Virus record (IMG/VR): IMGVR_UViG_3300042455_001086
Location: 62,001-126,000 of that record
Length of the DNA: 64,000 nucleotides
Reading direction: 5' to 3' (one strand)
Part shown: in pieces, positions 17,901 through 59,674 of the stretch
Position numbering within the stretch: the stretch's first letter is position 1
How the letters are laid out: every line of letters begins with the position of its first letter
Made by a program: the position numbers and the translations under genes
Notes under the pieces: generated by a model
Seen by the model: only the letters and a program-made list of their open reading frames with translations
Told to the model about the DNA's origin: nothing
Databases searched by the model: none

Positions 17901-18146
17901 TTATAATTTTGATTCTATGGTTTGAAGAATATTTTTTAACTTACGAGTTAAACTTCTTAAATTATCAAGTTCATCACTCATTCTTTTGTATTCCCCTTTT
18001 CTTGTTAAGACATCATATTCCTCCATTGATCTTGCAAGTTTTTGAGATACGTTTCTGTACTCATCTCTTATCGATCCCAGAGATCCCCGGTTTTCATTTA
18101 AAACCTTTCTTGCAATTCTTGTGATATCTTTTTCTGTTAGTCTCAT
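17901..18146 (-). CDS. Leader-bearing coiled-coil protein
   Basis: MRLTEKDITRIARKVLNE; TATTTAT 4 nt upstream. Confidence 0.75.
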   Translation of the reverse strand: MRLTEKDITRIARKVLNENRGSLGSIRDEYRNVSQKLARSMEEYDVLTRKGEYKRMSDELDNLRSLTRKLKNILQTIESKL

Positions 18147-18185
18147 AGTAATAAATACCCGGAATTTCAGAAAAAATTTCAAAAA

Positions 18186-18229
18186 TTTTTTTTGAATATT
18201 GGGTCTAATTTAAATTGGGGGTCGTGTTT
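18186..18229 (+). repeat. 44-bp exact noncoding direct repeat, copy 1; copy 2 at 18886-18929
   Basis: T8-gaatattgggtctaatttaaattgggggtcgtgttt; copies 700 bp apart. Confidence 0.9.
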
Positions 18230-18307
18230 CTGGGAGGTCATGTCGATTTTTTCTTATTTTTTCGACACTACATTAAATCATGTCGATTGAATAAACATAT
18301 TGGAAAT

Positions 18308-18337
18308 AAAAAACCCCTCTTTGTGGGAGGGGGGGGG
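18308..18337 (-). terminator. Intrinsic terminator
   Basis: A6-cccctc/gagggg. Confidence 0.6.
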
Positions 18338-18361
18338 TTAATATAAAATATAGAAAGATTA

Positions 18362-18799
18362 CTATCCTAAAGATAATATGGTTTTTTTAATTTTAGATAT
18401 TACATTACTTGGATTGGAAAAATCAATTTTACTTTTGGATGAATAGTTTTTAGATAAACTATTAAAATCAGTCTTTACTCCCCATTGATTTTCAAATATT
18501 TTACTTTGTATCTCATCACTTGTTATAAAAACTAAATTACCATCACTACCAATACCTAACCCCCAATTTTTTCTTTTACCTTGGTCACTTTTGTTTCCCC
18601 AGTTTAAAGTTGTCATTGGTTTATTTTTATATTTAAAATCAATGGTTTTTGGATTATTCCCATCTGAGTCGGTCACTAGTTTTAAACGATTTTTAATTGT
18701 TACCCAATTGTCGTTGGTCGTCATTTCTTCTTCCTCTATGATTATTCTTTTAACGATACGAGCTAAATCTGATTCAGTAAGTCTTATAATTTTTTTCAT
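18362..18799 (-). CDS. Leader-bearing hypothetical protein
   Basis: MKKIIRLTESDLARIVKRII. Confidence 0.75.
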   Translation of the reverse strand: MKKIIRLTESDLARIVKRIIIEEEEMTTNDNWVTIKNRLKLVTDSDGNNPKTIDFKYKNKPMTTLNWGNKSDQGKRKNWGLGIGSDGNLVFITSDEIQSKIFENQWGVKTDFNSLSKNYSSKSKIDFSNPSNVISKIKKTILSLG

Positions 18800-18885
18800 A
18801 ATATCCTATATTAATATTTTTTTTTATTTTAAAATAAATATTAATTAAAAAAAAAACGACTTTTTTTGAAAAAATTTTTTAAATT

Positions 18886-18929
18886 TTTTTTTTGAATATT
18901 GGGTCTAATTTAAATTGGGGGTCGTGTTT
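18886..18929 (+). repeat. 44-bp direct repeat, copy 2
   Basis: Matches 18186-18229. Confidence 0.9.
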
Positions 18930-19152
18930 TGTGGAAAACAATATTATATGTCGATTTTTTTAAAAAATTTAAACATACATTTATTCTATGTTTATCAAAT
19001 AGACATTCCCAAAATTGGGGAATTTTTTCCAAAAATTTTTTTTTAGAAATTGAGTATATCCCCAAAATGGGGGAAATTTTTTCTAAAATTTTTTTACGAA
19101 TACTTCATTTTTGGGATTGACCCCCCTATTTACCTGTCAAAATGTCATATAT

Positions 19153-19211
19153 GGGGGGGATACGGGAGGGGGGAGGGGGTAATAATGTCAGACCCCCATA
19201 TGGAGGGGGGG
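19153..19211 (+). other. G-run cluster (potential G-quadruplex)
   Basis: G7-ATAC-G3-A-G6-A-G5, then another G7, in an AT-rich genome. Confidence 0.55.
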
Positions 19212-19237
19212 TATATATACCATAAGCCCCCACTCGG

Positions 19238-19981
19238 TCAAATTGTCAGTTTTAACTTATTAACATTAACTTGTGGATAAAAATAATTAATCTCAAGATT
19301 GATTGGTTCTTTCTCATCTCTCCATCTAATATAAAAGTCACTACCAGATCCAAGATCCATTAGTTCGTCATCAGTTCTTCCTTCAAACTTTGTGTACTGC
19401 ATTGATTGGGGAATAAGATTATAATACTTATTTAATAACTCATTTAACTTATCGTTAAAGTTGTTTTCATATTCATCCTTATAAAGATTATCAACATATC
19501 TTCTTAGATACATTCCTCGTTCTCTAAGTAAATCAAACATATGTTCTTTTAAATATTCTTCTAGTTTTTTCGGCGGTGTGGTCCCGGTAATTTTATAGAA
19601 CTTATTTAAATCAATATCCATATCAACAGAAAGATATGTTCCACCTGAATTGTCGGTTGGTCTTACATTCGAAAGGTAGGGATAATGTTTTTTAATCATC
19701 TTTGATAGAATATCAAATCCTTTTTGTTTTTCATTGATTGATTCATTCATTGGTTGGGCATTCTTTTCTTCAATATCCATTTCCCCAATGATCTTTGTAT
19801 TTTCATCCAATGAATCTTTCCACACATTATATTCTTCTTCACCATTAAACTCCATTAACTTTGATTCGTAGTAATCCCCCTGGTCGTCAGTTATGTGTAG
19901 GGCAATTCCCTTTGTTATTGGCTTATCTTCTTCCAATAATAATTTGGTTAATTGTTCTTCTGTTATAATATACTTTTTCAT
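19238..19981 (-). CDS. Leader-bearing two-module hypothetical protein
   Basis: MKKYIITEEQL; internal SINE junction. Confidence 0.7.
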   Translation of the reverse strand: MKKYIITEEQLTKLLLEEDKPITKGIALHITDDQGDYYESKLMEFNGEEEYNVWKDSLDENTKIIGEMDIEEKNAQPMNESINEKQKGFDILSKMIKKHYPYLSNVRPTDNSGGTYLSVDMDIDLNKFYKITGTTPPKKLEEYLKEHMFDLLRERGMYLRRYVDNLYKDEYENNFNDKLNELLNKYYNLIPQSMQYTKFEGRTDDELMDLGSGSDFYIRWRDEKEPINLEINYFYPQVNVNKLKLTI

Positions 19982-19983
19982 AA

Positions 19984-20463
19984 TTAATTTACATCAAACC
20001 AATCATCATATACCTCACCATCTCTATGGTCTTCATCGGTTATTTCCCAATCCCAGGGAGCAATCTCATTGTGTTGTCTTAGTTCCTCAAGATAGCTTGA
20101 ATTAAAATCATCGTCAAGATATGTATCAACTTGACCTGATCTTGTGTATTGTATTCGAACCTTTTCATCCGTTACAAAATCACAGTCCTTATACTCAAGG
20201 GTTGGTCTATTAAGTTCCTTATCTTCCACATAATAAAATGGATTATTTTTTAATAGATAATAAAGATATTCAACATCCAATCTTTCAAACTCCCAACCAA
20301 TTGGTGCTTGAAGTATTTTTTTTGTATTTGAGTTGTCATACCTTGAAAATAAATTAAAGAAGTCTTCCGGCTCACCCAGTTCTTCATCTTTTAATACTTT
20401 GTGAACAAACCCCAAATACTTCTTTAGTTGAGGTTCGCTAAATTTTTCAAATCTTGTTCCCAT
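19984..20463 (-). CDS. Acidic hypothetical protein
   Basis: 159-aa ORF; TATTTAT 5 nt upstream. Confidence 0.7.
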   Translation of the reverse strand: MGTRFEKFSEPQLKKYLGFVHKVLKDEELGEPEDFFNLFSRYDNSNTKKILQAPIGWEFERLDVEYLYYLLKNNPFYYVEDKELNRPTLEYKDCDFVTDEKVRIQYTRSGQVDTYLDDDFNSSYLEELRQHNEIAPWDWEITDEDHRDGEVYDDWFDVN

Positions 20464-20483
20464 ATAAAATAAATATCAAATAG

Positions 20484-20515
20484 TTTGGTTATGTCAATTA
20501 TTATTTGTAACTTTG
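20484..20515 (+). promoter_or_regulatory. Bacteroidota-type housekeeping promoter (-33 TTTG, 20-nt spacer, -7 TAACTTTG)
   Basis: Exact match to TTTG-N20-TAnnTTTG; no ATG follows. Confidence 0.7.
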
Positions 20516-20519
20516 TATT

Positions 20520-20682
20520 GTTGGTGGTTGATTCCGAAACGGGTCCGAGTTCTCTAGGTGGGGGTTCGTAGAGGGTGAACTCCATAACATCTTATAAAAA
20601 TATAAGACAATAAAAAAATCCCCCAATACAAACCCGTCTTGTAAAGGAAGATAAACCCCCACCCACTCGTTTGTGGTTTTTT
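20520..20682 (+). ncRNA. Candidate structured small RNA
   Basis: GC-rich three-way junction downstream of a consensus promoter; weak hairpin + T6 at 20663-20682. Confidence 0.4.
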
Positions 20683-20821
20683 ATGTCATTATTTGTGTTT
20701 GATCTTATCTTAATCTTTACAAGCCACCAGGACTTTGATTAACTAATTCCCAGCTCTGGGGAAAATAAGTTCATTATATAAATATATGATTGTTTTGAAA
20801 AAGTCAAATATTTTTTATTAT

Positions 20822-21100
20822 TTACTTTTCCAGCTGAGCCCTTGAATGAGCTTGAATAAGATATGATATTGTCTGTAAATCCTGGGGACCAGTTATTTCC
20901 CCCATCTTATACAAACACTCAATCACATCTTCCATATCTGTATGAGTTAAAATATGTATTCGCTGTTTTAATTTATTCCCGTGAAGTGTGGCCTCTTTGT
21001 AAATACAGTGTCCGGAATATAAACCATGACAATATGTCACACTTATGGTGTCCCCTGATTTACTGACCTGGGGATTGAAAATGTCTAATATTGATTCCAT
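20822..21100 (-). CDS. Hypothetical protein
   Basis: 92-aa ORF. Confidence 0.5.
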   Translation of the reverse strand: MESILDIFNPQVSKSGDTISVTYCHGLYSGHCIYKEATLHGNKLKQRIHILTHTDMEDVIECLYKMGEITGPQDLQTISYLIQAHSRAQLEK

Positions 21101-21221
21101 ATGTTAATAATTTGTTTATAAATATTTGTTAATTTATTTGGAAATGTCAAAATGTCAGGTTCGTGTTGGGGACTACACAATCCCCCAGTTAGGGTTTCCC
21201 CACTTTTTCCCACTCCATAGT

Positions 21222-21519
21222 TCCCACTTATTACCACAATAATTGTCGTTCTAAATATCATAACCCCAATTTTTTCCCCTTCCTAGTATCTGGAAGACCA
21301 CTTTTTTTACTATATCTATTTCCCCGCTAAAATGGTATAGTTATAGTTTAAAGGCCGTGGATAGACATTTATGTTGTTTGTAAATCACTTTATTGGTTAC
21401 TTAAAAACATATCTTCAACGACCCGTAAGGGGGTATTTCAACAATGACCACCTTAAATTTACACAACTAATAACACATAGTAAATGGTAATAATCACTAA
21501 TAAGTGGTAATAAGTGGGA
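21222..21519. repeat. 16-bp perfect inverted repeat (21222-21237 / 21504-21519)
   Basis: tcccacttattaccac / gtggtaataagtggga. Confidence 0.85.
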
Positions 21520-21874
21520 TTATGTTTTATATCAGTTAAGCAAGGTTAAACCTTGCAATCAAGATATAATTAGTAATCCCTTTCACTACCACATTCATTT
21601 TAGTCTGTAATCACCACACCAAAATATAATATACATACAACACTAAAATATAACTTTGGTACAAAGTTGTCTGGATAGTTGTACCATATCATTATACCAA
21701 ATGTGTTATTATATTTTGTGTACCATATTGGTCACTAATACTGGGGGGGACCCATTAAAATGGGGGAAAAAGATTAGAACATATGAGTGAATGAAAAAGG
21801 AGACCGGATGAGGTCTCCCTTTGTAATGAGTGAGTATGTTGTAATGTTTTTACCTATTTAATAATCTTTAGCTC

Positions 21875-21913
21875 TTACCTTAATATTCTTCTTATGGATT
21901 CTTGTAGGTTCAT
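21875..21913 (-). pseudogene. Empty leader cassette: MNLQESIRRILR*
   Basis: Leader DNA identical to neighbours, but GAA codon replaced by TAA. Confidence 0.7.
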
Positions 21914-21915
21914 AA

Positions 21916-22371
21916 TTAATCTCTATATATTCCCAATACTGGGATTTTAGTTAATCCTTTTCTAGTATAGGAGTGGAATCTGTGCCAACCATCTATAATT
22001 AGTTCTTCATCATCAAAATCAATTATGATTGGTAATACTGAATCTCCGTGGTCTGTTTGTTCATCTCCATACCATTTATGATAATTCTCAAAACTATCCC
22101 ATTCTAATCGTTCTGTAACCTCATCTTTTATTAACTTAATTGGGACAACTCCATAGTAAAACATTTTTCTTTTAAAAGAAGTTTGTAACTCGTCATCAAT
22201 TAAATCTTTAATCTCCATATCATTTGTAGTTCCTTCATTTCTAAATATCATTAATGATTTTTGATATGGATATGGTAATTTATAAAATGGTGATACATCT
22301 AAATAATGACTAATATCTTTTGATTCCAGTTCTTCCCTTAATATTCTTCTTATGGATTCTTGTAGGTTCAT
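21916..22371 (-). CDS. MNLQE leader + ParB/Srx-like domain
   Basis: LPIIID....IIDGWHRF. Confidence 0.7.
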   Translation of the reverse strand: MNLQESIRRILREELESKDISHYLDVSPFYKLPYPYQKSLMIFRNEGTTNDMEIKDLIDDELQTSFKRKMFYYGVVPIKLIKDEVTERLEWDSFENYHKWYGDEQTDHGDSVLPIIIDFDDEELIIDGWHRFHSYTRKGLTKIPVLGIYRD

Positions 22372-22691
22372 AATCTTTCTTTGTAGTGGTTGTATAATGA
22401 TTTAATTTTGTCATCAAACAAATCTGATACATCTGTTACAAAATCTATTTCTTCTTGTTGTGGTAGATCTTCCCAGCCCAATTCATACTCATTATACATA
22501 ATTGTTTCCACAGCTCTTAAAGTTAATTCATATTTGAATTGTCCGTAATTTTCCGTTTCATAATACACTTGTTCGGCATTACCTGGAAGTTTTCTTTTAA
22601 TATCGTCTAATTTAATTCTCCTGCGAAAGAATTTCGTTTCATTTAGTAATTCTTCCCTTAATATTCTTCTTATGTTTTCTTGTAGATTCAT
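22368..22691 (-). CDS. MNLQE leader + RR-family domain
   Basis: MNLQENIRRILREE; FFRRRI. Confidence 0.75.
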   Translation of the reverse strand: MNLQENIRRILREELLNETKFFRRRIKLDDIKRKLPGNAEQVYYETENYGQFKYELTLRAVETIMYNEYELGWEDLPQQEEIDFVTDVSDLFDDKIKSLYNHYKERL

Positions 22692-22694
22692 TTA

Positions 22695-22764
22695 TAATAA
22701 ATATATTGTAATCTTTTTATCTAATCTATAATCTTTAGTAATTCTCTTACTTCTGGGTGTGATA
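22695..22764 (-). repeat. 70-bp exact direct repeat, also at 23408-23477
   Basis: 3' end of gene 23434 plus TATTTAT element, duplicated. Confidence 0.9.
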
Positions 22765-23404: not shown

Positions 23405-23433
23405 ATGTAATAAATATATTGTAATCTTTTTAT

Positions 23434-26128: not shown

Positions 26129-26185
26129 ATGTTATAAATAGTTTATATATACAAAAAACCCCACTTTTATGTGAGGTTAATAATT

Positions 26186-29496: not shown

Positions 29497-30645
29497 TTAT
29501 TTACCAAAAAGTTCAGCTTCTCGTTTTCTTCTAACTTCAAGACCTGGAAATTTTCCAAACATATGTGAGCTTTCTTTTTTTAATTGTTCTTGAGCCTTTT
29601 CCATTTGACCTCTTTTTACATATTGAATAAATTCACTCATTCTAAAATTTTTAATCCCCATATTGTATATCATTGAAATCATTGCGTTATACATATTTTG
29701 TGTTATATTTGGTGTTATTCCTTTTTTTTCCCAATCATTTAATATTTTATTTAACTGGTCTTTTGATTCTTCAACATCATCTCTTAAAAGAATTTCAGCT
29801 TGGTTTTTTGTGATTGTTGTTTTACCTGGAATAATTCTATGATATTTAGGTAAGAAATTATAATTTCCACCAACATCACCTCTATTTGGATTACTAAACA
29901 CAGCGTGTCCATAACCAATTGTTTTTGCACCATCACCGATGTCATAAGCGGTTAATATTGGTTCGCCTTTATTAACGACTGAACCTTCTTCATATTTTAG
30001 ATGATCAATTAATTTATCGTCATAATTACGAATTCGTTTTTTTGTTTCTTTTAAACCACCACCAATATTGATTGGTAGTTCTGTTTTTTCTGGTTCAACT
30101 TGTTTTGGTTCTGGTAATGATTGATAACCAATAACACCTATTAAAGAATATAAAGCATATTTTAAAATCTTTTTTCTTACATTATCGTCAAGATTTTTTA
30201 TCTTTTCTTTAAGTAATTCCAAATATTTTTTAGCTTCTTCTTTTGTTTTTACCCACAAAGTTGAAAGATCTATATTTTTTTTGACATCAGTAAAATCCCA
30301 CTCAAAATCTGGTTCCCTATCTTCATTTATAAGATTTATCGACTGAATAGCCAAATTGATGTATTCTGAACTTAATTTTAAATTTTCATTTAAGTCTCTT
30401 GTGTATTTTCTAAATCTATATGGTGAGTTTTTGACTGCTGACTTTGGAAATCTGGTTCCAATACCTTGTCTTCTGGCCATTTTAAGTGTTCTTGTATATT
30501 CTTCAAGTTCTTTTTTCTTTTTCCCATCACAATGTGCTCGTTGTGAAAAACCTTTTGGGTTATCACAGTCGATTGAATCCTTATATTCTTTGGACCATTT
30601 CTCTTCTAATTCTTCTTTTAATATTTTTCTAATTAATTGTTTCAC
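29497..30645 (-). CDS. Leader + modules + GH24 phage lysozyme
   Basis: LKYEEG..AYD.GDG..TIGYGH..YNAMISMIYNMG..GLEVRRKREAELF; GTG start. Confidence 0.85.
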   Translation of the reverse strand: MKQLIRKILKEELEEKWSKEYKDSIDCDNPKGFSQRAHCDGKKKKELEEYTRTLKMARRQGIGTRFPKSAVKNSPYRFRKYTRDLNENLKLSSEYINLAIQSINLINEDREPDFEWDFTDVKKNIDLSTLWVKTKEEAKKYLELLKEKIKNLDDNVRKKILKYALYSLIGVIGYQSLPEPKQVEPEKTELPINIGGGLKETKKRIRNYDDKLIDHLKYEEGSVVNKGEPILTAYDIGDGAKTIGYGHAVFSNPNRGDVGGNYNFLPKYHRIIPGKTTITKNQAEILLRDDVEESKDQLNKILNDWEKKGITPNITQNMYNAMISMIYNMGIKNFRMSEFIQYVKRGQMEKAQEQLKKESSHMFGKFPGLEVRRKREAELFGK

Positions 30646-32480: not shown

Positions 32481-33479
32481 TTAAGCGACACTACTAACTA
32501 AATCAAACTTATCCGAATCACTTACAGCTTTTGATCTATGAAACCCAACAGCACCACCGGCATTTATATCAGCAAAATAAGTTGCGGAATCTTTTTTGTC
32601 TTTAAACTTAGGAAATGAATCACCTGACTTTCCTTTTGTTAAAAACACCACAGCAATTTCAGATGCCACATTTGGGTCATTAACTAAATCTGGATTACCA
32701 ACTAAATCTTTACCAATTAAATTACCATATTTTTCATAATTTCCTCTACCGGTCAATTGGTTGAGACCTCTTCCTCTATATTTCCAACCATCATCACCAC
32801 CTTGATTTCCAGCGGTTTTAGCATATACAACATTAAAGAATTTTTCAGGATCTTTTTTTAAGTTGGTTAATTCACTATCCGAATATTTTGCAACTCTGGA
32901 ACCAAAAATACTTTTAATTCTTGAATTTGATGTTCCGGCATATGATAGTTCTGATTTTGGTTTAAAACCCGATTCTTTTGAGATTACAGATAATATGCCA
33001 ATTTTTGCTAAAGGGTCTTTTATTCCAAATTTATTCATATGGTTAATAATTAAACCGATATTTCTTTTTTGTTCTCCGTCAAAACCACCAACTAATTTAA
33101 TATCACTATTTTTGGGTATTTGACTATCTTCTTGATCCGAACTAATACTATTTTCAAATAAAAACTTTTCTGTCAATTTCTTAATTGTTTCTAAGTCAAA
33201 ATAACCAGATTCTTCTAAATTATTTTCGGATTGGAAGTCTTTAATGGTTGATTGTGTGTTTTCGTCTAAAATCCCGTTTAACTCTATTTGTTTTTGTGTC
33301 ACAATTCTTAAAACAATTTGCATTATTCTAATCTCTTTGTTTGCACTATTTTTTGTAATCTCTTTGTTTTTACTAACCAAATCTTGATAGACCTTTATGA
33401 ATTTTTCAAATAGTTTTTTTCTATCATCATTTTCGTTGATGAGTTTTTTAAACTGGCTTTCAGTAATTACAATTTTCAT
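32481..33479 (-). CDS. Leader + peptidoglycan-binding domain + GH19 muramidase
   Basis: IKDFQSENNLEESG; KES; DGWKYRGRGLNQLTGRGNY; DLVGNPDLV. Confidence 0.85.
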   Translation of the reverse strand: MKIVITESQFKKLINENDDRKKLFEKFIKVYQDLVSKNKEITKNSANKEIRIMQIVLRIVTQKQIELNGILDENTQSTIKDFQSENNLEESGYFDLETIKKLTEKFLFENSISSDQEDSQIPKNSDIKLVGGFDGEQKRNIGLIINHMNKFGIKDPLAKIGILSVISKESGFKPKSELSYAGTSNSRIKSIFGSRVAKYSDSELTNLKKDPEKFFNVVYAKTAGNQGGDDGWKYRGRGLNQLTGRGNYEKYGNLIGKDLVGNPDLVNDPNVASEIAVVFLTKGKSGDSFPKFKDKKDSATYFADINAGGAVGFHRSKAVSDSDKFDLVSSVA

Positions 33480-58405: not shown

Positions 58406-59674
58406 TTATAAGAATAATTTTTTGGATTGTTTTTCACGGTGAAATTTGATTGCAAAACGATGAACTTCTTCTTGTATTTTGCCAAACATTGTAAAATTTA
58501 AATCATCTTTGATATTGAATTCGGAACCATCAACTTTGTGAATAATAGATGATTTGTGATTTGAATCTTTTGATATTGAAATAAGATCCACCTGGTTTAA
58601 TATTCCAAGTTCTTCAAATACTCTTTTTGCAATACCAAGTTGTCCCTTACCACCATCAATGATTACAAGATCCGGAAGTTTTTGTTTTTCGTCAATTAAT
58701 CTTTTAAATCTACGATTAAGTATTTCATCAAATGATGCGTAATCATCAACGCCATCTACGGTTCTGATAATATACTTACGGTATTCAGATTTAACTGGAT
58801 TATCATTTTGGAACCTAACAGACGCTGCAACATTGGAATCACCCTGGTTGTGTGAATTATCAAACGCCTCAATTATTTGTGGAAGATTTTTAAGTCCGAG
58901 GATATTCTTCACATCAAACGCTTTCTTGTTGTATTTCTGTAATCTAACAACATTCAACTTATTATCAATAATTTCCAGATTTGAAAGTTTTGATAATAAG
59001 ATTTGTGCTTTTTCAAATTCCAAGTTGTCGGAATGATGCTTCATTGATTTTTTAAACTTTGATTTAAGTCCGGAAAAATCAAGCGATAAAACTTTTTTGA
59101 CATCACGAACAATCTCGTTATAATAAAACTTTTTGATGTTATTTATGCAAGGTGCATTACATCTTCCCAAATGGAATTCAAGACAAGTTTTGAACTTTTC
59201 TTTTGTAATGTTTTCTTCTGTCAAATCATATGAACAACTGCGAAGTTCAAACACATCGTGAATTAGGTTATAGATTTCACGACATAAGATACCAGAGGTA
59301 AGATCAAGTGATAGTCTATCATCTTGTTTGTTTTTTACAATTTCTAGTTTTGGGAAATCTTCATCGGTAAAACACAAGGACCATTTTCTTGTTCTATCAT
59401 CTTTTCCTTTTAGGTTAAACTTTGGTTTGTATAATTTAATTAATTCTTCTTCAAGGATAATTGCTTCTTGTTCTGATGAAGTGATTTTGAATTCAACATC
59501 AACAATATTCTCAACAAGAGTTTTTGTTTTTCCAGTATGATTTTTTTGAAAATAAGATAACACTCTCTTTGGTAAAAACTTTGACATACCAACATAGATG
59601 ATTTGTTCTTTGTCATTTTTGAACAAATAACATCCAGGATTTTGTGGTATGTCTTTTAGTTTTTCAGAAATCAT
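58406..59674 (-). CDS. uvrC: Excinuclease ABC subunit C, lacking the C-terminal HhH
   Basis: GIY-YIG (PGCYLF, IYVG), Cys cluster CLEFHLGRCNAPC, IEAFDNSH, IIDGGKGQL. Confidence 0.93.
   Translation of the reverse strand: MISEKLKDIPQNPGCYLFKNDKEQIIYVGMSKFLPKRVLSYFQKNHTGKTKTLVENIVDVEFKITSSEQEAIILEEELIKLYKPKFNLKGKDDRTRKWSLCFTDEDFPKLEIVKNKQDDRLSLDLTSGILCREIYNLIHDVFELRSCSYDLTEENITKEKFKTCLEFHLGRCNAPCINNIKKFYYNEIVRDVKKVLSLDFSGLKSKFKKSMKHHSDNLEFEKAQILLSKLSNLEIIDNKLNVVRLQKYNKKAFDVKNILGLKNLPQIIEAFDNSHNQGDSNVAASVRFQNDNPVKSEYRKYIIRTVDGVDDYASFDEILNRRFKRLIDEKQKLPDLVIIDGGKGQLGIAKRVFEELGILNQVDLISISKDSNHKSSIIHKVDGSEFNIKDDLNFTMFGKIQEEVHRFAIKFHREKQSKKLFL

What the first reader, a model, noticed from the sequence alone, without database searches (positions are those of the whole stretch)
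20484..20682. Consensus host promoter driving a GC-rich structured RNA instead of an ORF
Seen: TTTG-N20-TAACTTTG followed by TATT-G, the same geometry as TTTG-TATT-ATG in protein genes but with no ATG. The next ~68 nt can form a three-way junction: gttggtgg/ccataac, gattccg-aaa-cgggtc and gagttc...gaactc. A weak hairpin with T6 lies at 20663-20682. Inference: an early small ncRNA (regulatory, anti-defence decoy or replication primer) next to the origin-like zone. It does not fit a tRNA cloverleaf or the hammerhead core.
Basis: partly seen in the sequence, partly recalled or inferred. Interest (0 to 1): 0.6.

Follow-up and report, generated by a model that had tools for sequence, protein, structure and literature searches.

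The report
New phage small RNA gene family

Summary
TTTG-N20-TAACTTTG-TATT-G lies at 20484-20520 on the + strand, followed by a GC-rich stretch with no conserved ORF.

Pattern scans found at least 86 distinct relatives, mostly in lake metagenomes and on jumbo-phage contigs. All carry TTTG at -36..-33 and TAnnTTTG at -12..-5, the position of the measured sigma-A box in Flavobacterium. That puts the start at G20520.

The RNA has three helices backed by compensatory changes:
- P1, GUY/RAC.
- P2, a short hairpin.
- P3, a hairpin with all five scored pairs covarying.

A fourth hairpin, P5 (AGGGUG with a YRYYYU tail), is followed by a U run in many relatives. A possible pseudoknot joins GGGU to the ACUC in the P5 loop. 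G·U pairs far outnumber non-standard cells (which include any A·C), so the + strand is the RNA.

The T6 hairpin is weak and missing in the closest relative.

Nothing matches in Rfam, ARAGORN, GenBank phages or 185,579 species' representative bacterial and archaeal genomes. No RNA-seq evidence could be obtained.

Positions 20612-20771 on the minus strand hold a second, convergent conserved RNA with a phage-type promoter. Function is unknown; a trans-acting early sRNA is my best guess.

The parts
20484..20487 (+). -33 element TTTG of the RNA-1 promoter (positions -36..-33)
   Evidence: Conserved 84-99% in 92 distinct family upstream regions, although no search pattern required it.
20492..20496 (+). 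Conserved TGTCA at -28..-24 inside the promoter spacer; role unknown
   Evidence: 67-95% conserved per position in the family. On the minus strand it reads TTGACA.
20508..20515 (+). -7 box TAACTTTG (TAnnTTTG) at -12..-5
   Evidence: This is the same position as the sigma-A box in the F. psychrophilum TSS map (PMC9723704). All 11 distinct copies from the scan that did not constrain the upstream region carry a TAnnTTT(G/A) box, at this position in 10 and one base further upstream in L011.
20520..20599 (+). RNA-1 core (predicted start G20520). Covariance-model match over the full model.
   Evidence: R1 scores 61.5 bits, E 6e-24. It is the only full-length, high-scoring copy in the 257-kb genome; the next hit is a 24-nt stretch at 10.4 bits, E 0.04.
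20520..20540 (+). 5' domain. P1 is GUU 20520-22 with AAC 20538-40. The internal loop is GGU/GA. P2 is GG 20526-27 with CC 20534-35.
   Evidence: The third P1 pair covaries: C-G 64, U-A 21, A-U 1. P2 sequences differ between relatives but stay complementary.
20541..20544 (+). Linker GGGU. Proposed pseudoknot partner of ACUC 20579-82 (P4).
   Evidence: RNAalifold predicts it. It is invariant, partly because the search patterns fixed it, so covariation cannot test it.
20546..20568 (+). P3 hairpin: CGAGUUCUC, loop UAGGU, GGGGGUUCG
   Evidence: All five scored pairs change on both sides; 98.8% of cells are paired.
20570..20593 (+). P5 hairpin. AGGGUG 20572-77 pairs with CAUCUU 20588-93. The loop AACUCCAUAA holds the conserved ACUCC.
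   Evidence: The family tail is YRYYYU opposite AGGGUG; 93.6% of cells are paired, with one-sided changes only. RNAfold finds this hairpin in several relatives, and a U run follows it in many.
20590..20607 (.). A/U hairpin UCUUAUA-AAAA-UAUAAGA. It shares bases with the 3' strand of P5.
   Evidence: Nearly identical in the close relative (a single T insertion), so no covariation is available.
20612..20652 (-). Hairpin plus U7 on the minus strand: the terminator of the convergent RNA-2 and the 92-aa gene
   Evidence: Minus-strand fold. Relative L005 has a different hairpin plus U7 at the same place.
20663..20682 (+). A possible but unconserved + strand terminator.
   Evidence: 4-bp stem, not called by the scan. 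Lies in a stretch deleted in L005.
20653..20771 (-). Body of RNA-2, a second conserved non-coding RNA convergent with RNA-1. Together with its terminator it spans about 20771 to 20612.
   Evidence: 26 distinct copies (27 sequences extracted, one spurious) share UUUUCCCC..GGGAAUUAGUU..GUAAAG. By eye, two helices keep pairing through changed sequence; not scored with the count of structure pairs.
20778..20784 (-). TATTTAT, the phage-type promoter motif upstream of RNA-2
   Evidence: The same motif lies 5-6 nt before the ATG of 37 genes of this phage. It is conserved upstream of RNA-2 in relatives.
20822..21100 (-). Gene for a 92-aa protein of unknown function, convergent with RNA-1. It is the most frequent neighbour of the RNA.
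   Evidence: Homologues lie downstream and convergent in 41 of 89 loci. AlphaFold2 mean pLDDT is 92.1. No Pfam, PHROGs, PDB-sequence or Foldseek match.
19984..20463 (-). Gene for a 159-aa protein, divergent from RNA-1. Its TATTTAT promoter lies back to back with the RNA-1 promoter.
   Evidence: No family match. Conserved only in close relatives.

Best explanation
Positions 20484-~20600 (+) are a gene for a small non-coding RNA, here called RNA-1, in a 257-kb phage of a Bacteroidota host.

How it is made. Host RNA polymerase with sigma-A starts at G20520 from a near-consensus promoter (TTTG at -33, TAnnTTTG at -7).

How it folds. The ~75-80 nt core has three parts:
- a 5' hairpin domain (P1, a 3x2 internal loop, then P2);
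- a variable hairpin, P3;
- a 3' hairpin, P5, with a conserved loop NACUCCRAC.
In many relatives a U run follows P5, so it would act as the intrinsic terminator. The linker GGGU can pair with ACUC in the P5 loop to close a compact pseudoknot.

What is shown: the promoter conservation, the strand, helices P1-P3, and the lack of coding potential.

What is inferred: P5 as terminator, the pseudoknot, early expression, and the function.

My best guess at function. It is a trans-acting RNA made early in infection. Its invariant segments (ACGGGU, AGAGGGUG, ACUCC) would be the surface recognised by a protein or RNA partner of host or phage. It may work together with the convergent RNA-2, which has a phage-type (presumably later) promoter.
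For: Family size. Scans by core motif found 14 loci holding the RNA (11 distinct copies) among 32 hits in viral contigs, and at least 120 metagenome contigs. These give 86 distinct sequences, several on phage contigs of 85-340 kb.

Promoter. Its position-specific conservation includes the unforced -33 TTTG. The -7 box sits at -12..-5 as in measured Flavobacterium sigma-A promoters (PMC9723704).

Host phylum. The phage's genes have no Shine-Dalgarno enrichment (3.5% against 3.6% in random 16-mers) and an A-rich upstream region, as in Bacteroidota (PMC6847099 abstract).

Structure:
- P1+P2+P3 pair in 94.2% of cells against 74.5% in shuffles.
- The covariation score is 0.562 against 0.173, reached by 0 of 500 shuffles. 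Slid controls give at most 0.177.
- With P4 and P5 added, 95.2% of cells pair.

Strand. P3 has 54 G·U/U·G cells against 5 non-standard cells.

Model hits. The window copy scores 61.5 bits. Chance hits in bacterial genomes score 13-27 bits.

Coding. Indels are not in multiples of three and there is no shared ORF.
Against: - No transcript has been seen. All runs that hold the stretch are DNA or probably DNA.
- The window's own copy is an outlier. It scores near the bottom of the family (61.5 bits), has GAACUCC where most members have GGACUCC, carries the tail AUAAC, and has no U run after P5. Its 3' end is therefore unknown.
- As a single sequence it folds no better than shuffles.
- GGGU, AGAGGGUG and ACUCC were fixed by my search patterns. 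Their invariance, and therefore P4 and part of P5, cannot be tested by covariation.
- Nothing identifies a partner or a target.
Confidence: 0.85

Rival explanations
1. The functional unit is on the minus strand. The GC-rich stretch would be part of a large structured RNA or terminator read in the same direction as the flanking genes, and the + strand promoter would be a chance match.
For: In the window the minus strand of 20519-20684 folds to -51.6 kcal/mol, z -3.1, with MFE equal to centroid. The + strand gives z -0.6. All neighbouring genes are on the minus strand.
Against: The long closing stem of that fold lies in a 32-nt stretch missing from the closest relative. In the family the helices hold 54 (P3) and over 250 (P5) G·U cells, which would be A·C on the minus strand. 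The + strand promoter is conserved at fixed distance in every copy. The minus-strand signal is explained by RNA-2 and its terminator at 20612-20771.
Confidence: 0.05
2. It acts as DNA, not RNA: a protein-binding or origin-associated element between two genes.
For: The region from 18000 to 21500 is rich in repeats and G/C runs. A conserved TGTCA/TTGACA lies in the promoter spacer.
Against: Compensatory base changes keep hairpins whose sequence and length vary freely. G·U pairs are tolerated but A·C is not. A promoter and, in relatives, a hairpin plus U run bracket the element. These are marks of selection on a transcript.
Confidence: 0.04
3. It is one half of an antisense pair. RNA-1 (host promoter) and RNA-2 (phage-type promoter), or the 92-aa gene's mRNA, are convergent and overlap at their 3' ends, so each controls the other by transcriptional interference or duplex formation. 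The folded core would be secondary.
For: A convergent arrangement recurs. RNA-2 lies downstream in about 22 loci. Other relatives have a second convergent sRNA gene whose tail is the inverted copy of RNA-1's tail. The 92-aa gene is convergent in 41 of 89 loci. In the window, + strand read-through to T6 at 20682 would overlap RNA-2 by about 70 nt.
Against: The most conserved parts of RNA-1 lie upstream of any overlap. In many relatives RNA-1 ends at its own hairpin plus U run before reaching the partner. Some loci carry RNA-1 without RNA-2 or a type B gene.
Confidence: 0.2
4. It is a ribozyme or a ligand-binding aptamer working on its own. About 35 near-invariant nucleotides in a ~77-nt pseudoknotted RNA would suit that.
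For: Long conserved unpaired segments (ACGGGU, AGAGGGUGNACUCC) sit beside freely varying helices. A pseudoknot is possible.
Against: No match to any Rfam ribozyme or riboswitch, even at E up to 10. The invariance is partly an artefact of the search patterns. A 5'-anchored scan found variants such as GGGUA, and one copy without ACUCC. No gene lies downstream on the same strand to regulate.
Confidence: 0.08
5. It encodes a tiny peptide (TTG start at 20522, 16 codons).
For: The frame is open in the window.
Against: The frame is broken in relatives, for example by a stop at codon 4 in L005. Hairpin lengths change by 1-2 nt, and substitutions are compensatory rather than synonymous.
Confidence: 0.01

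Closest known systems
Phage-encoded trans-acting small RNAs (reviewed in PMC12197685, listed)
   Same: A short non-coding transcript from a phage genome, with its own promoter, hairpins and, in relatives, a hairpin plus U-run terminator. It is not attached to a coding gene.
   Different: No sequence or model similarity to any described family. No seed or target is known. The phage clade is uncultured (no GenBank phage match). The conserved core is much larger than a typical seed.
Bacteroidota sigma-A promoters (TTTG at -33, TAnnTTTG at -7)
   Same: The same two elements. The -7 box lies at -12..-5 relative to the predicted start, as in the F. psychrophilum TSS map (PMC9723704; PMC10309648).
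   Different: Here the promoter sits in a phage and drives an RNA gene. It also has a conserved TGTCA at -28..-24, which is not part of the published consensus as far as I know.
tRNA, tmRNA and tRNA-like elements of jumbo phages
   Same: A GC-rich island in an AT-rich phage that carries 24 tRNA genes elsewhere. The size is similar.
   Different: There is no cloverleaf, T arm or acceptor stem. ARAGORN is blank, and Rfam tmRNA gives only 7.5 bits over 27 nt.
H-type pseudoknot RNAs with a hairpin inserted in a loop (small riboswitch aptamers, small ribozymes)
   Same: The proposed topology: the GGGU linker pairs with the loop of the 3' hairpin, and P3 sits between them.
   Different: The pseudoknot is unproven. 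There is no match to any curated family, and no downstream gene or cleavage site to act on.

Membership tests
tRNA / tmRNA | Cloverleaf or tRNA-like domain detectable by ARAGORN or the Rfam models | tested here: not met
   ARAGORN finds 0 genes in the window but 24 tRNAs elsewhere in the same genome. Rfam tmRNA gives 7.5 bits against a gathering score of 47.
Hammerhead ribozyme | Conserved core CUGANGA ... GAAA around three helices | tested here: not met
   No CUGANGA is present. CGAAAC occurs in the window, but relatives have CGAGAC or CGACGAC. No Rfam hit at E up to 10.
Any Rfam 15 family (4227 models) | Score at or above the family's gathering threshold | tested here: not met
   No match for the window at gathering thresholds. 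Only noise at E up to 10 on 20300-20900. No match at E up to 1 on ten loci holding consensus-like copies.
Bacteroidota sigma-A promoter | TAnnTTTG at about -12..-5 and TTTG near -33, about 19-21 nt apart | tested here: met
   The window has TTTG 20484-87, 20 nt, then TAACTTTG 20508-15. The position agrees with PMC9723704. Use of this promoter in vivo was not tested.
Intrinsic (rho-independent) terminator at the 3' end of the RNA | A stable G+C-rich hairpin directly followed by a U run | tested here: inconclusive
   In relatives P5 is followed by U runs, for example L275, L107, L032 and L052. In the window P5 is followed by AUAAAAAU. The only T6 (20677-82) follows a 4-bp stem that the scan does not call.
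CRISPR repeat mimic / solitary repeat (RNA anti-CRISPR) | Sequence and structure like the repeat of a host CRISPR array | not tested
   The host is unknown and no host repeats are at hand. The 5' domain (GUUG...GAAAC, 21 nt) only loosely recalls repeat ends, which is a resemblance from memory. There are no direct repeats of it in the window and no full-length second copy in the genome.
Type III antitoxin RNA (ToxI-like) | Tandem direct repeats of the RNA just upstream of, and co-oriented with, an endoribonuclease toxin gene | tested here: not met
   It is a single copy. There are no tandem repeats. The neighbouring 92-aa gene is convergent, not co-oriented, and matches no toxin family.
Structured non-coding RNA supported by comparative analysis (the general criterion) | Helices kept through compensatory changes well above shuffled and slid controls, with no coding signal | tested here: met
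   144 cells changed on both sides against 34 in shuffles (0 of 500 reach it), and a covariation score of 0.562 against 0.173. P1 and P3 are strongly supported. P2 is supported with alignment noise (73.8% paired).

The most novel reading that the evidence does not exclude
RNA-1 is the founding member of a superfamily of phage small RNAs that share a 3' module (GACUCC-RACCUGCC-UUAUA). In uncultured Bacteroidota jumbo phages these form convergent pairs: one RNA made by host polymerase early, one from a phage-type promoter later. The pseudoknotted core would bind and neutralise a host factor, such as a defence sensor or an RNA-processing or translation component. That would make it an RNA-based take-over or anti-defence device of a new kind.
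Probability: 0.15. Interest if true: 0.85.

Novelty: new variant of a known kind. Interest (0 to 1): 0.62.

Why it matters
Phage-encoded small RNAs are known mainly from a few model phages of Proteobacteria and Firmicutes. Almost nothing is known for phages of Bacteroidota, which lack Hfq and Shine-Dalgarno-led translation.

This RNA family is abundant in lakes. It is strongly conserved and sits beside other conserved RNA genes.

It gives a concrete, testable entry point into RNA-based control in uncultured jumbo phages. It is also a ready candidate family for Rfam.

Tried and rejected
- Known classes: tRNA/tmRNA, Rfam at gathering and permissive thresholds and the hammerhead core gave nothing.
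- A four-way junction on the minus strand was rejected because its closing stem is deleted in L005.
- Pairing of the P3 loop with the tail looked good in one subfamily (CAAGU/ACUUG against CAGGU/ACCUG) but fails in others.
- Pairing of the tail with RAC-GGGU, up to 9 bp in some members, was dropped. The extra pairs show no covariation (A·C 57 of 87) and they clash with P1.
- GGGU(2)/ACCU was replaced by the better register, P5 (89.5% against 93.6% paired).
- A K-turn reading of the P1/P2 internal loop was rejected because G7 forms a Watson-Crick pair with C in most members.
- Exact-word scans of viral contigs with the window's own sequence gave 0 hits.
- BLAST of the region, of a consensus-like copy and of the 92-aa protein against GenBank phages gave no match.
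- The scan of bacterial and archaeal genomes gave 56 hits, all chance (13-27 bits, coding or GC-rich context).
- Expression: no RNA run holds the stretch. The one run labelled RNA-Seq is probably DNA and shows nothing special here.
- The 92-aa neighbour gave a confident model but no fold match (best Foldseek E 0.047) and no Pfam or PDB sequence match.
- Literature searches found no description of this RNA.

Full report
**Setting.** The window is bases 62001-126000 of a 257,166-bp virus record with inverted terminal repeats, rated 100% complete.
- The genome is 29% GC, and nearly all genes lie on the minus strand.
- It carries 24 tRNA genes just upstream of the window.
- The stretch 20300-21100 is held by 19 DNA runs from 17 studies, almost all lake or freshwater metagenomes.
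- Neither the region nor its neighbour protein matches any phage in GenBank.

**The host is probably a member of Bacteroidota.**
- Of 289 genes, 32 have TAnnTTT(G/A) 2-7 nt before the ATG.
- Shine-Dalgarno-like words upstream of starts are no more frequent than in random 16-mers (3.5% against 3.6%). The upstream region is A-rich.
- This fits what is reported for the phylum (PMC6847099 abstract; PMC9723704).
- A second promoter class, TATTTAT 5-6 nt before the ATG, precedes 37 genes and usually has no -35 element. I take it to be phage-specific.

**The observation.** The + strand reads TTTG (20484-87), 20 nt, TAACTTTG (20508-15), TATT, then GTTGGTGG....
- The following 60-nt windows reach 57% GC.
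- There is no ATG and no conserved frame.
- As a bare pattern the promoter is weak evidence: 15 matches in the window against 7.8 expected.
- The window's RNA alone folds no better than shuffles (z +1.16).
- Taken by itself, then, the finding could have been chance.

**Relatives.**
- The syntenic intergenic region of contig IMGVR_UViG_3300042861_001706 is 80% identical in DNA, while the flanking 92-aa protein is only 62% identical.
- A scan of viral contigs for ACGGGT-N10-40-GAGGGTGNACTCC, with nothing required upstream, gave 32 hits. Of these, 14 loci (11 distinct copies) lie in AT-rich phage contigs. All carry a TAnnTTT(G/A) box, 4 nt before GU in ten and 5 nt in L011.
- Several contigs are 85-340 kb long.
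- Together they give 86 distinct RNA sequences.

**Promoter.** In 92 distinct upstream regions:
- TTTG occupies -36..-33 (95, 99, 84 and 88%);
- TGTCA occupies -28..-24;
- TAnnTTTG occupies -12..-5.

The -33 element was never part of a search pattern. In the TSS map of Flavobacterium psychrophilum, the sigma-A box TAnnTTTG lies at -12 to -5 (PMC9723704). The predicted start is therefore G20520. The same promoter block drives a protein gene in another phage (L006), which shows it is a portable promoter.

**Structure.** I built covariance model R1 from a MAFFT alignment with P1, P2 and P3 marked, then realigned the 86 sequences to it.
- P1 is G1-C, U2-A and Y3-R. The third pair is C-G in 64, U-A in 21 and A-U in 1.
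- P2 is a 2-4 bp hairpin of changing sequence: GG/CC, GUU/AAC, GAGA/UCUC, AGU/ACU.
- P3 is a hairpin in which all five scored pairs change on both sides; 98.8% of cells are paired.
- For P1+P2+P3, 94.2% of cells pair against 74.5% in shuffles. There are 144 double-change cells against 34, and the covariation score is 0.562 against 0.173. None of 500 shuffles reaches these values, and slid controls give at most 0.177.
- RNAalifold adds GGGU/ACUC around P3.

RNAfold of single members showed a third hairpin. AGGGUG pairs with tail positions 5-10, which across the family read Y-R-Y-Y-Y-U. That is exactly what pairing with AGGGUG allows once wobble is counted. This P5 is paired in 93.6% of cells. 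In many relatives a U run follows it, so it looks like the terminator.

GGGU/ACUC then becomes a pseudoknot between the P1-P3 linker and the P5 loop. My search patterns fixed GGGU, AGAGGGUG and ACUCC, so P4 and the 5' strand of P5 cannot be tested by covariation.

A last scan, anchored only on the promoter and the 5' domain, found variants:
- GGGUA, with U opposite the A in 4 of 6;
- one copy without ACUCC;
- one type (L283) in which ACUCC pairs with an adjacent GGAGU.

**Strand.** P3 holds 54 G·U/U·G cells against 5 non-standard cells, and P5 holds more than 250 G·U cells. On the minus strand these would be A·C mismatches. The RNA is the + strand, the direction of the promoter.

**The window's copy.** Helices, in window coordinates:

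| Helix | Pairing |
|---|---|
| P1 | 20520-22 with 20538-40 |
| P2 | 20526-27 with 20534-35 |
| GGGU linker | 20541-44 |
| P3 | 20546-54 with 20560-68 |
| P5 | 20572-77 with 20588-93 |
| P4 | 20541-44 with 20579-82 |

- It scores 61.5 bits (E 6e-24), near the bottom of the family range of 54-92 bits.
- It is the only full-length, high-scoring copy in the genome; the next hit is 24 nt at 10.4 bits, E 0.04.
- It is unusual in three ways: GAACUCC where most members have GGACUCC, the tail AUAACAUC, and no U run after P5.
- Its 3' end may lie just after P5, or as far as T6 at 20682.

The three proposed helices pair in 55.0% of family cells against 54.5% in shuffles, with a covariation score of 0.100 against 0.097. 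The T6 hairpin has a 4-bp stem, is not called by the scan, and lies in 32 nt absent from L005.

**The rest of the interval.** In the window the minus strand of 20519-20684 folds well (z -3.1), but the long stem responsible is specific to the window. What is conserved on the minus strand is a second RNA gene, RNA-2.
- It has a TATTTAT motif (20784-20778).
- Its conserved body reads UUUUCCCCAGAGCUGGGAAUUAGUUAAUCAAAGUCCUGGUGGCUUGUAAAGAUUAAGAU.
- It ends in a hairpin plus U7 (20652-20612).
- Twenty-six distinct copies share it (27 extracted, one spurious). By eye, at least two helices stay complementary through changed sequence, for example UUAAUC/GAUUAA, UUAUUC/GAAUAA and UUAUCC/GGAUAA; this was not scored.
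- So the 358-nt spacer holds two convergent RNA genes, one with a host-type and one with a phage-type promoter.

In other relatives the convergent partner is a different small RNA, which I call type B. It reads GUAAC...GGGGACCGAGUAGACUCC-AACCUGCC-UUAUA, has its own TTTG/TAnnTTTG promoter, and shares RNA-1's 3' module.

**Neighbours.**
- A 92-112 aa protein (window 20822-21100, minus strand) lies convergent and downstream in 41 of 89 loci.
- Its AlphaFold2 model is confident (mean pLDDT 92.1; one helix, four strands, two helices).
- It has no Pfam, PHROGs, PDB-sequence or Foldseek match.
- Whether it works with the RNA is unknown.

**Absence elsewhere.**
- There are no Rfam matches.
- The core motif gave 56 hits among the representative genomes of 185,579 bacterial and archaeal species. 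All score 13-27 bits with R1 and lie in GC-rich or coding context.
- The family therefore appears confined to phages.

**Expression.** No RNA run holds the stretch. The one run labelled RNA-Seq is rated probably DNA and gives only scattered low-depth contigs. Expression, timing and RNA ends remain untested.

**Function.** I found no evidence for a partner or a target. The architecture is that of a trans-acting small RNA or a small RNP component: its own promoter, three hairpins, a terminator-like 3' hairpin, long conserved segments outside the covarying helices, and no gene downstream on the same strand. A role in an antisense pair with RNA-2 is possible, and a ribozyme or aptamer cannot be excluded. 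Large aquatic phages predicted to infect Flavobacteriia and to depend on host transcription have been described (PMC12619734). I did not test whether this phage belongs to that lineage.

**Verdict.** The gene is real with high probability. The drawn fold is wrong. The family is new to Rfam, and its function is open.

Noticed in passing
window 20612-20784, minus strand: RNA-2, a second conserved non-coding RNA convergent with RNA-1. It has a phage-type TATTTAT promoter, a conserved body (UUUUCCCC...GGGAAUUAGUU...GUAAAG...) with helices that appear to covary by eye, and its own hairpin plus U7 terminator. Twenty-six distinct copies occur in related contigs.
   Followed up: partly
G000 genome about 159355-159505, minus strand (locus L331; outside the window, window coordinate about 97500): A third candidate small RNA in the same phage. 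It has the same promoter geometry (TTTG-N20-TATCTTTG-TATT-GTTGATG...). The ~150 nt hold a GGGUUGG...AACCUACCUUAAU segment that resembles RNA-1's 3' module, and end in a hairpin plus U run. No Rfam match. A near-identical copy lies in relative L255.
   Followed up: partly
related loci, e.g. L011:4410-4500, L007:10502-10580, L113, L074: Type B small RNA genes lie convergent with RNA-1 in many relatives. They read GUAAC-hairpin-GGGGACCGAGUAGACUCC-AACCUGCC-UUAUA and have their own TTTG/TAnnTTTG promoter. A further type (GUUGGUGAUUAAGUUCGAAAC... plus terminator) occurs in L008 and L027. None is present in the window.
   Followed up: partly
whole phage genome; window examples 22692-22705, 23405-23418, 26129-26142: There are two promoter classes, both placed so close to the ATG that the mRNAs would be leaderless or nearly so. 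One is host-type TAnnTTTG + 4-5 nt + ATG (32 genes). The other is TATTTAT + 5-6 nt + ATG (37 genes, usually with no -35 element).
   Followed up: partly
window 18768-18901, 19036-19169, 21850-21983, 22330-22372: These short stretches have much higher summed contig depth in lake metagenomes than their surroundings. Many contigs break or join at 22330/22372. This looks like repeats shared among many phages or mobile elements.
   Followed up: no
window 19113-19231 and 21154-21227, minus strand: Further GC-rich islands (up to 65% GC) made of G and C runs. TGACATTTTGACA occurs in both. Related TTGAC words lie upstream of the genes starting at 20463 and 21100 and upstream of RNA-2. They may be operator sites.
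   Followed up: no
window 18165-18229 and 18865-18929: A 65-nt direct repeat, 89% identical, 700 nt apart. Shorter A/T-rich repeats with CCCCAAAAUGGGG-type hairpins lie at 19005-19095.
   Followed up: no
related loci L230, L239, L259, L295 (viral contigs): Other promoter-led non-coding stretches hold two or three copies of ACGATT(T/C)AGATAC separated by short spacers and ending in U runs. This may be a different repeat-containing phage RNA.
   Followed up: no
L004, L030, L075, L095, L136, L319 (relatives): Some RNA-1 copies carry a 25-30 nt insert after ACUCC. Examples are CACGUGCGUGGUCGGUUAGAACACUCC and UUGACGUUGUCUUCGGAGAUAGAUAACUCC. Each insert ends in a second ACUCC before the usual tail, and the same insert occurs in type B genes.
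   Followed up: no
window 58406-59674, minus strand: A 422-aa protein with GIY-YIG and UvrC RNase H endonuclease domains (UvrC-like). Lysozyme and peptidoglycan-binding/chitinase-like genes lie at 29497-30645 and 32481-33479.
   Followed up: no
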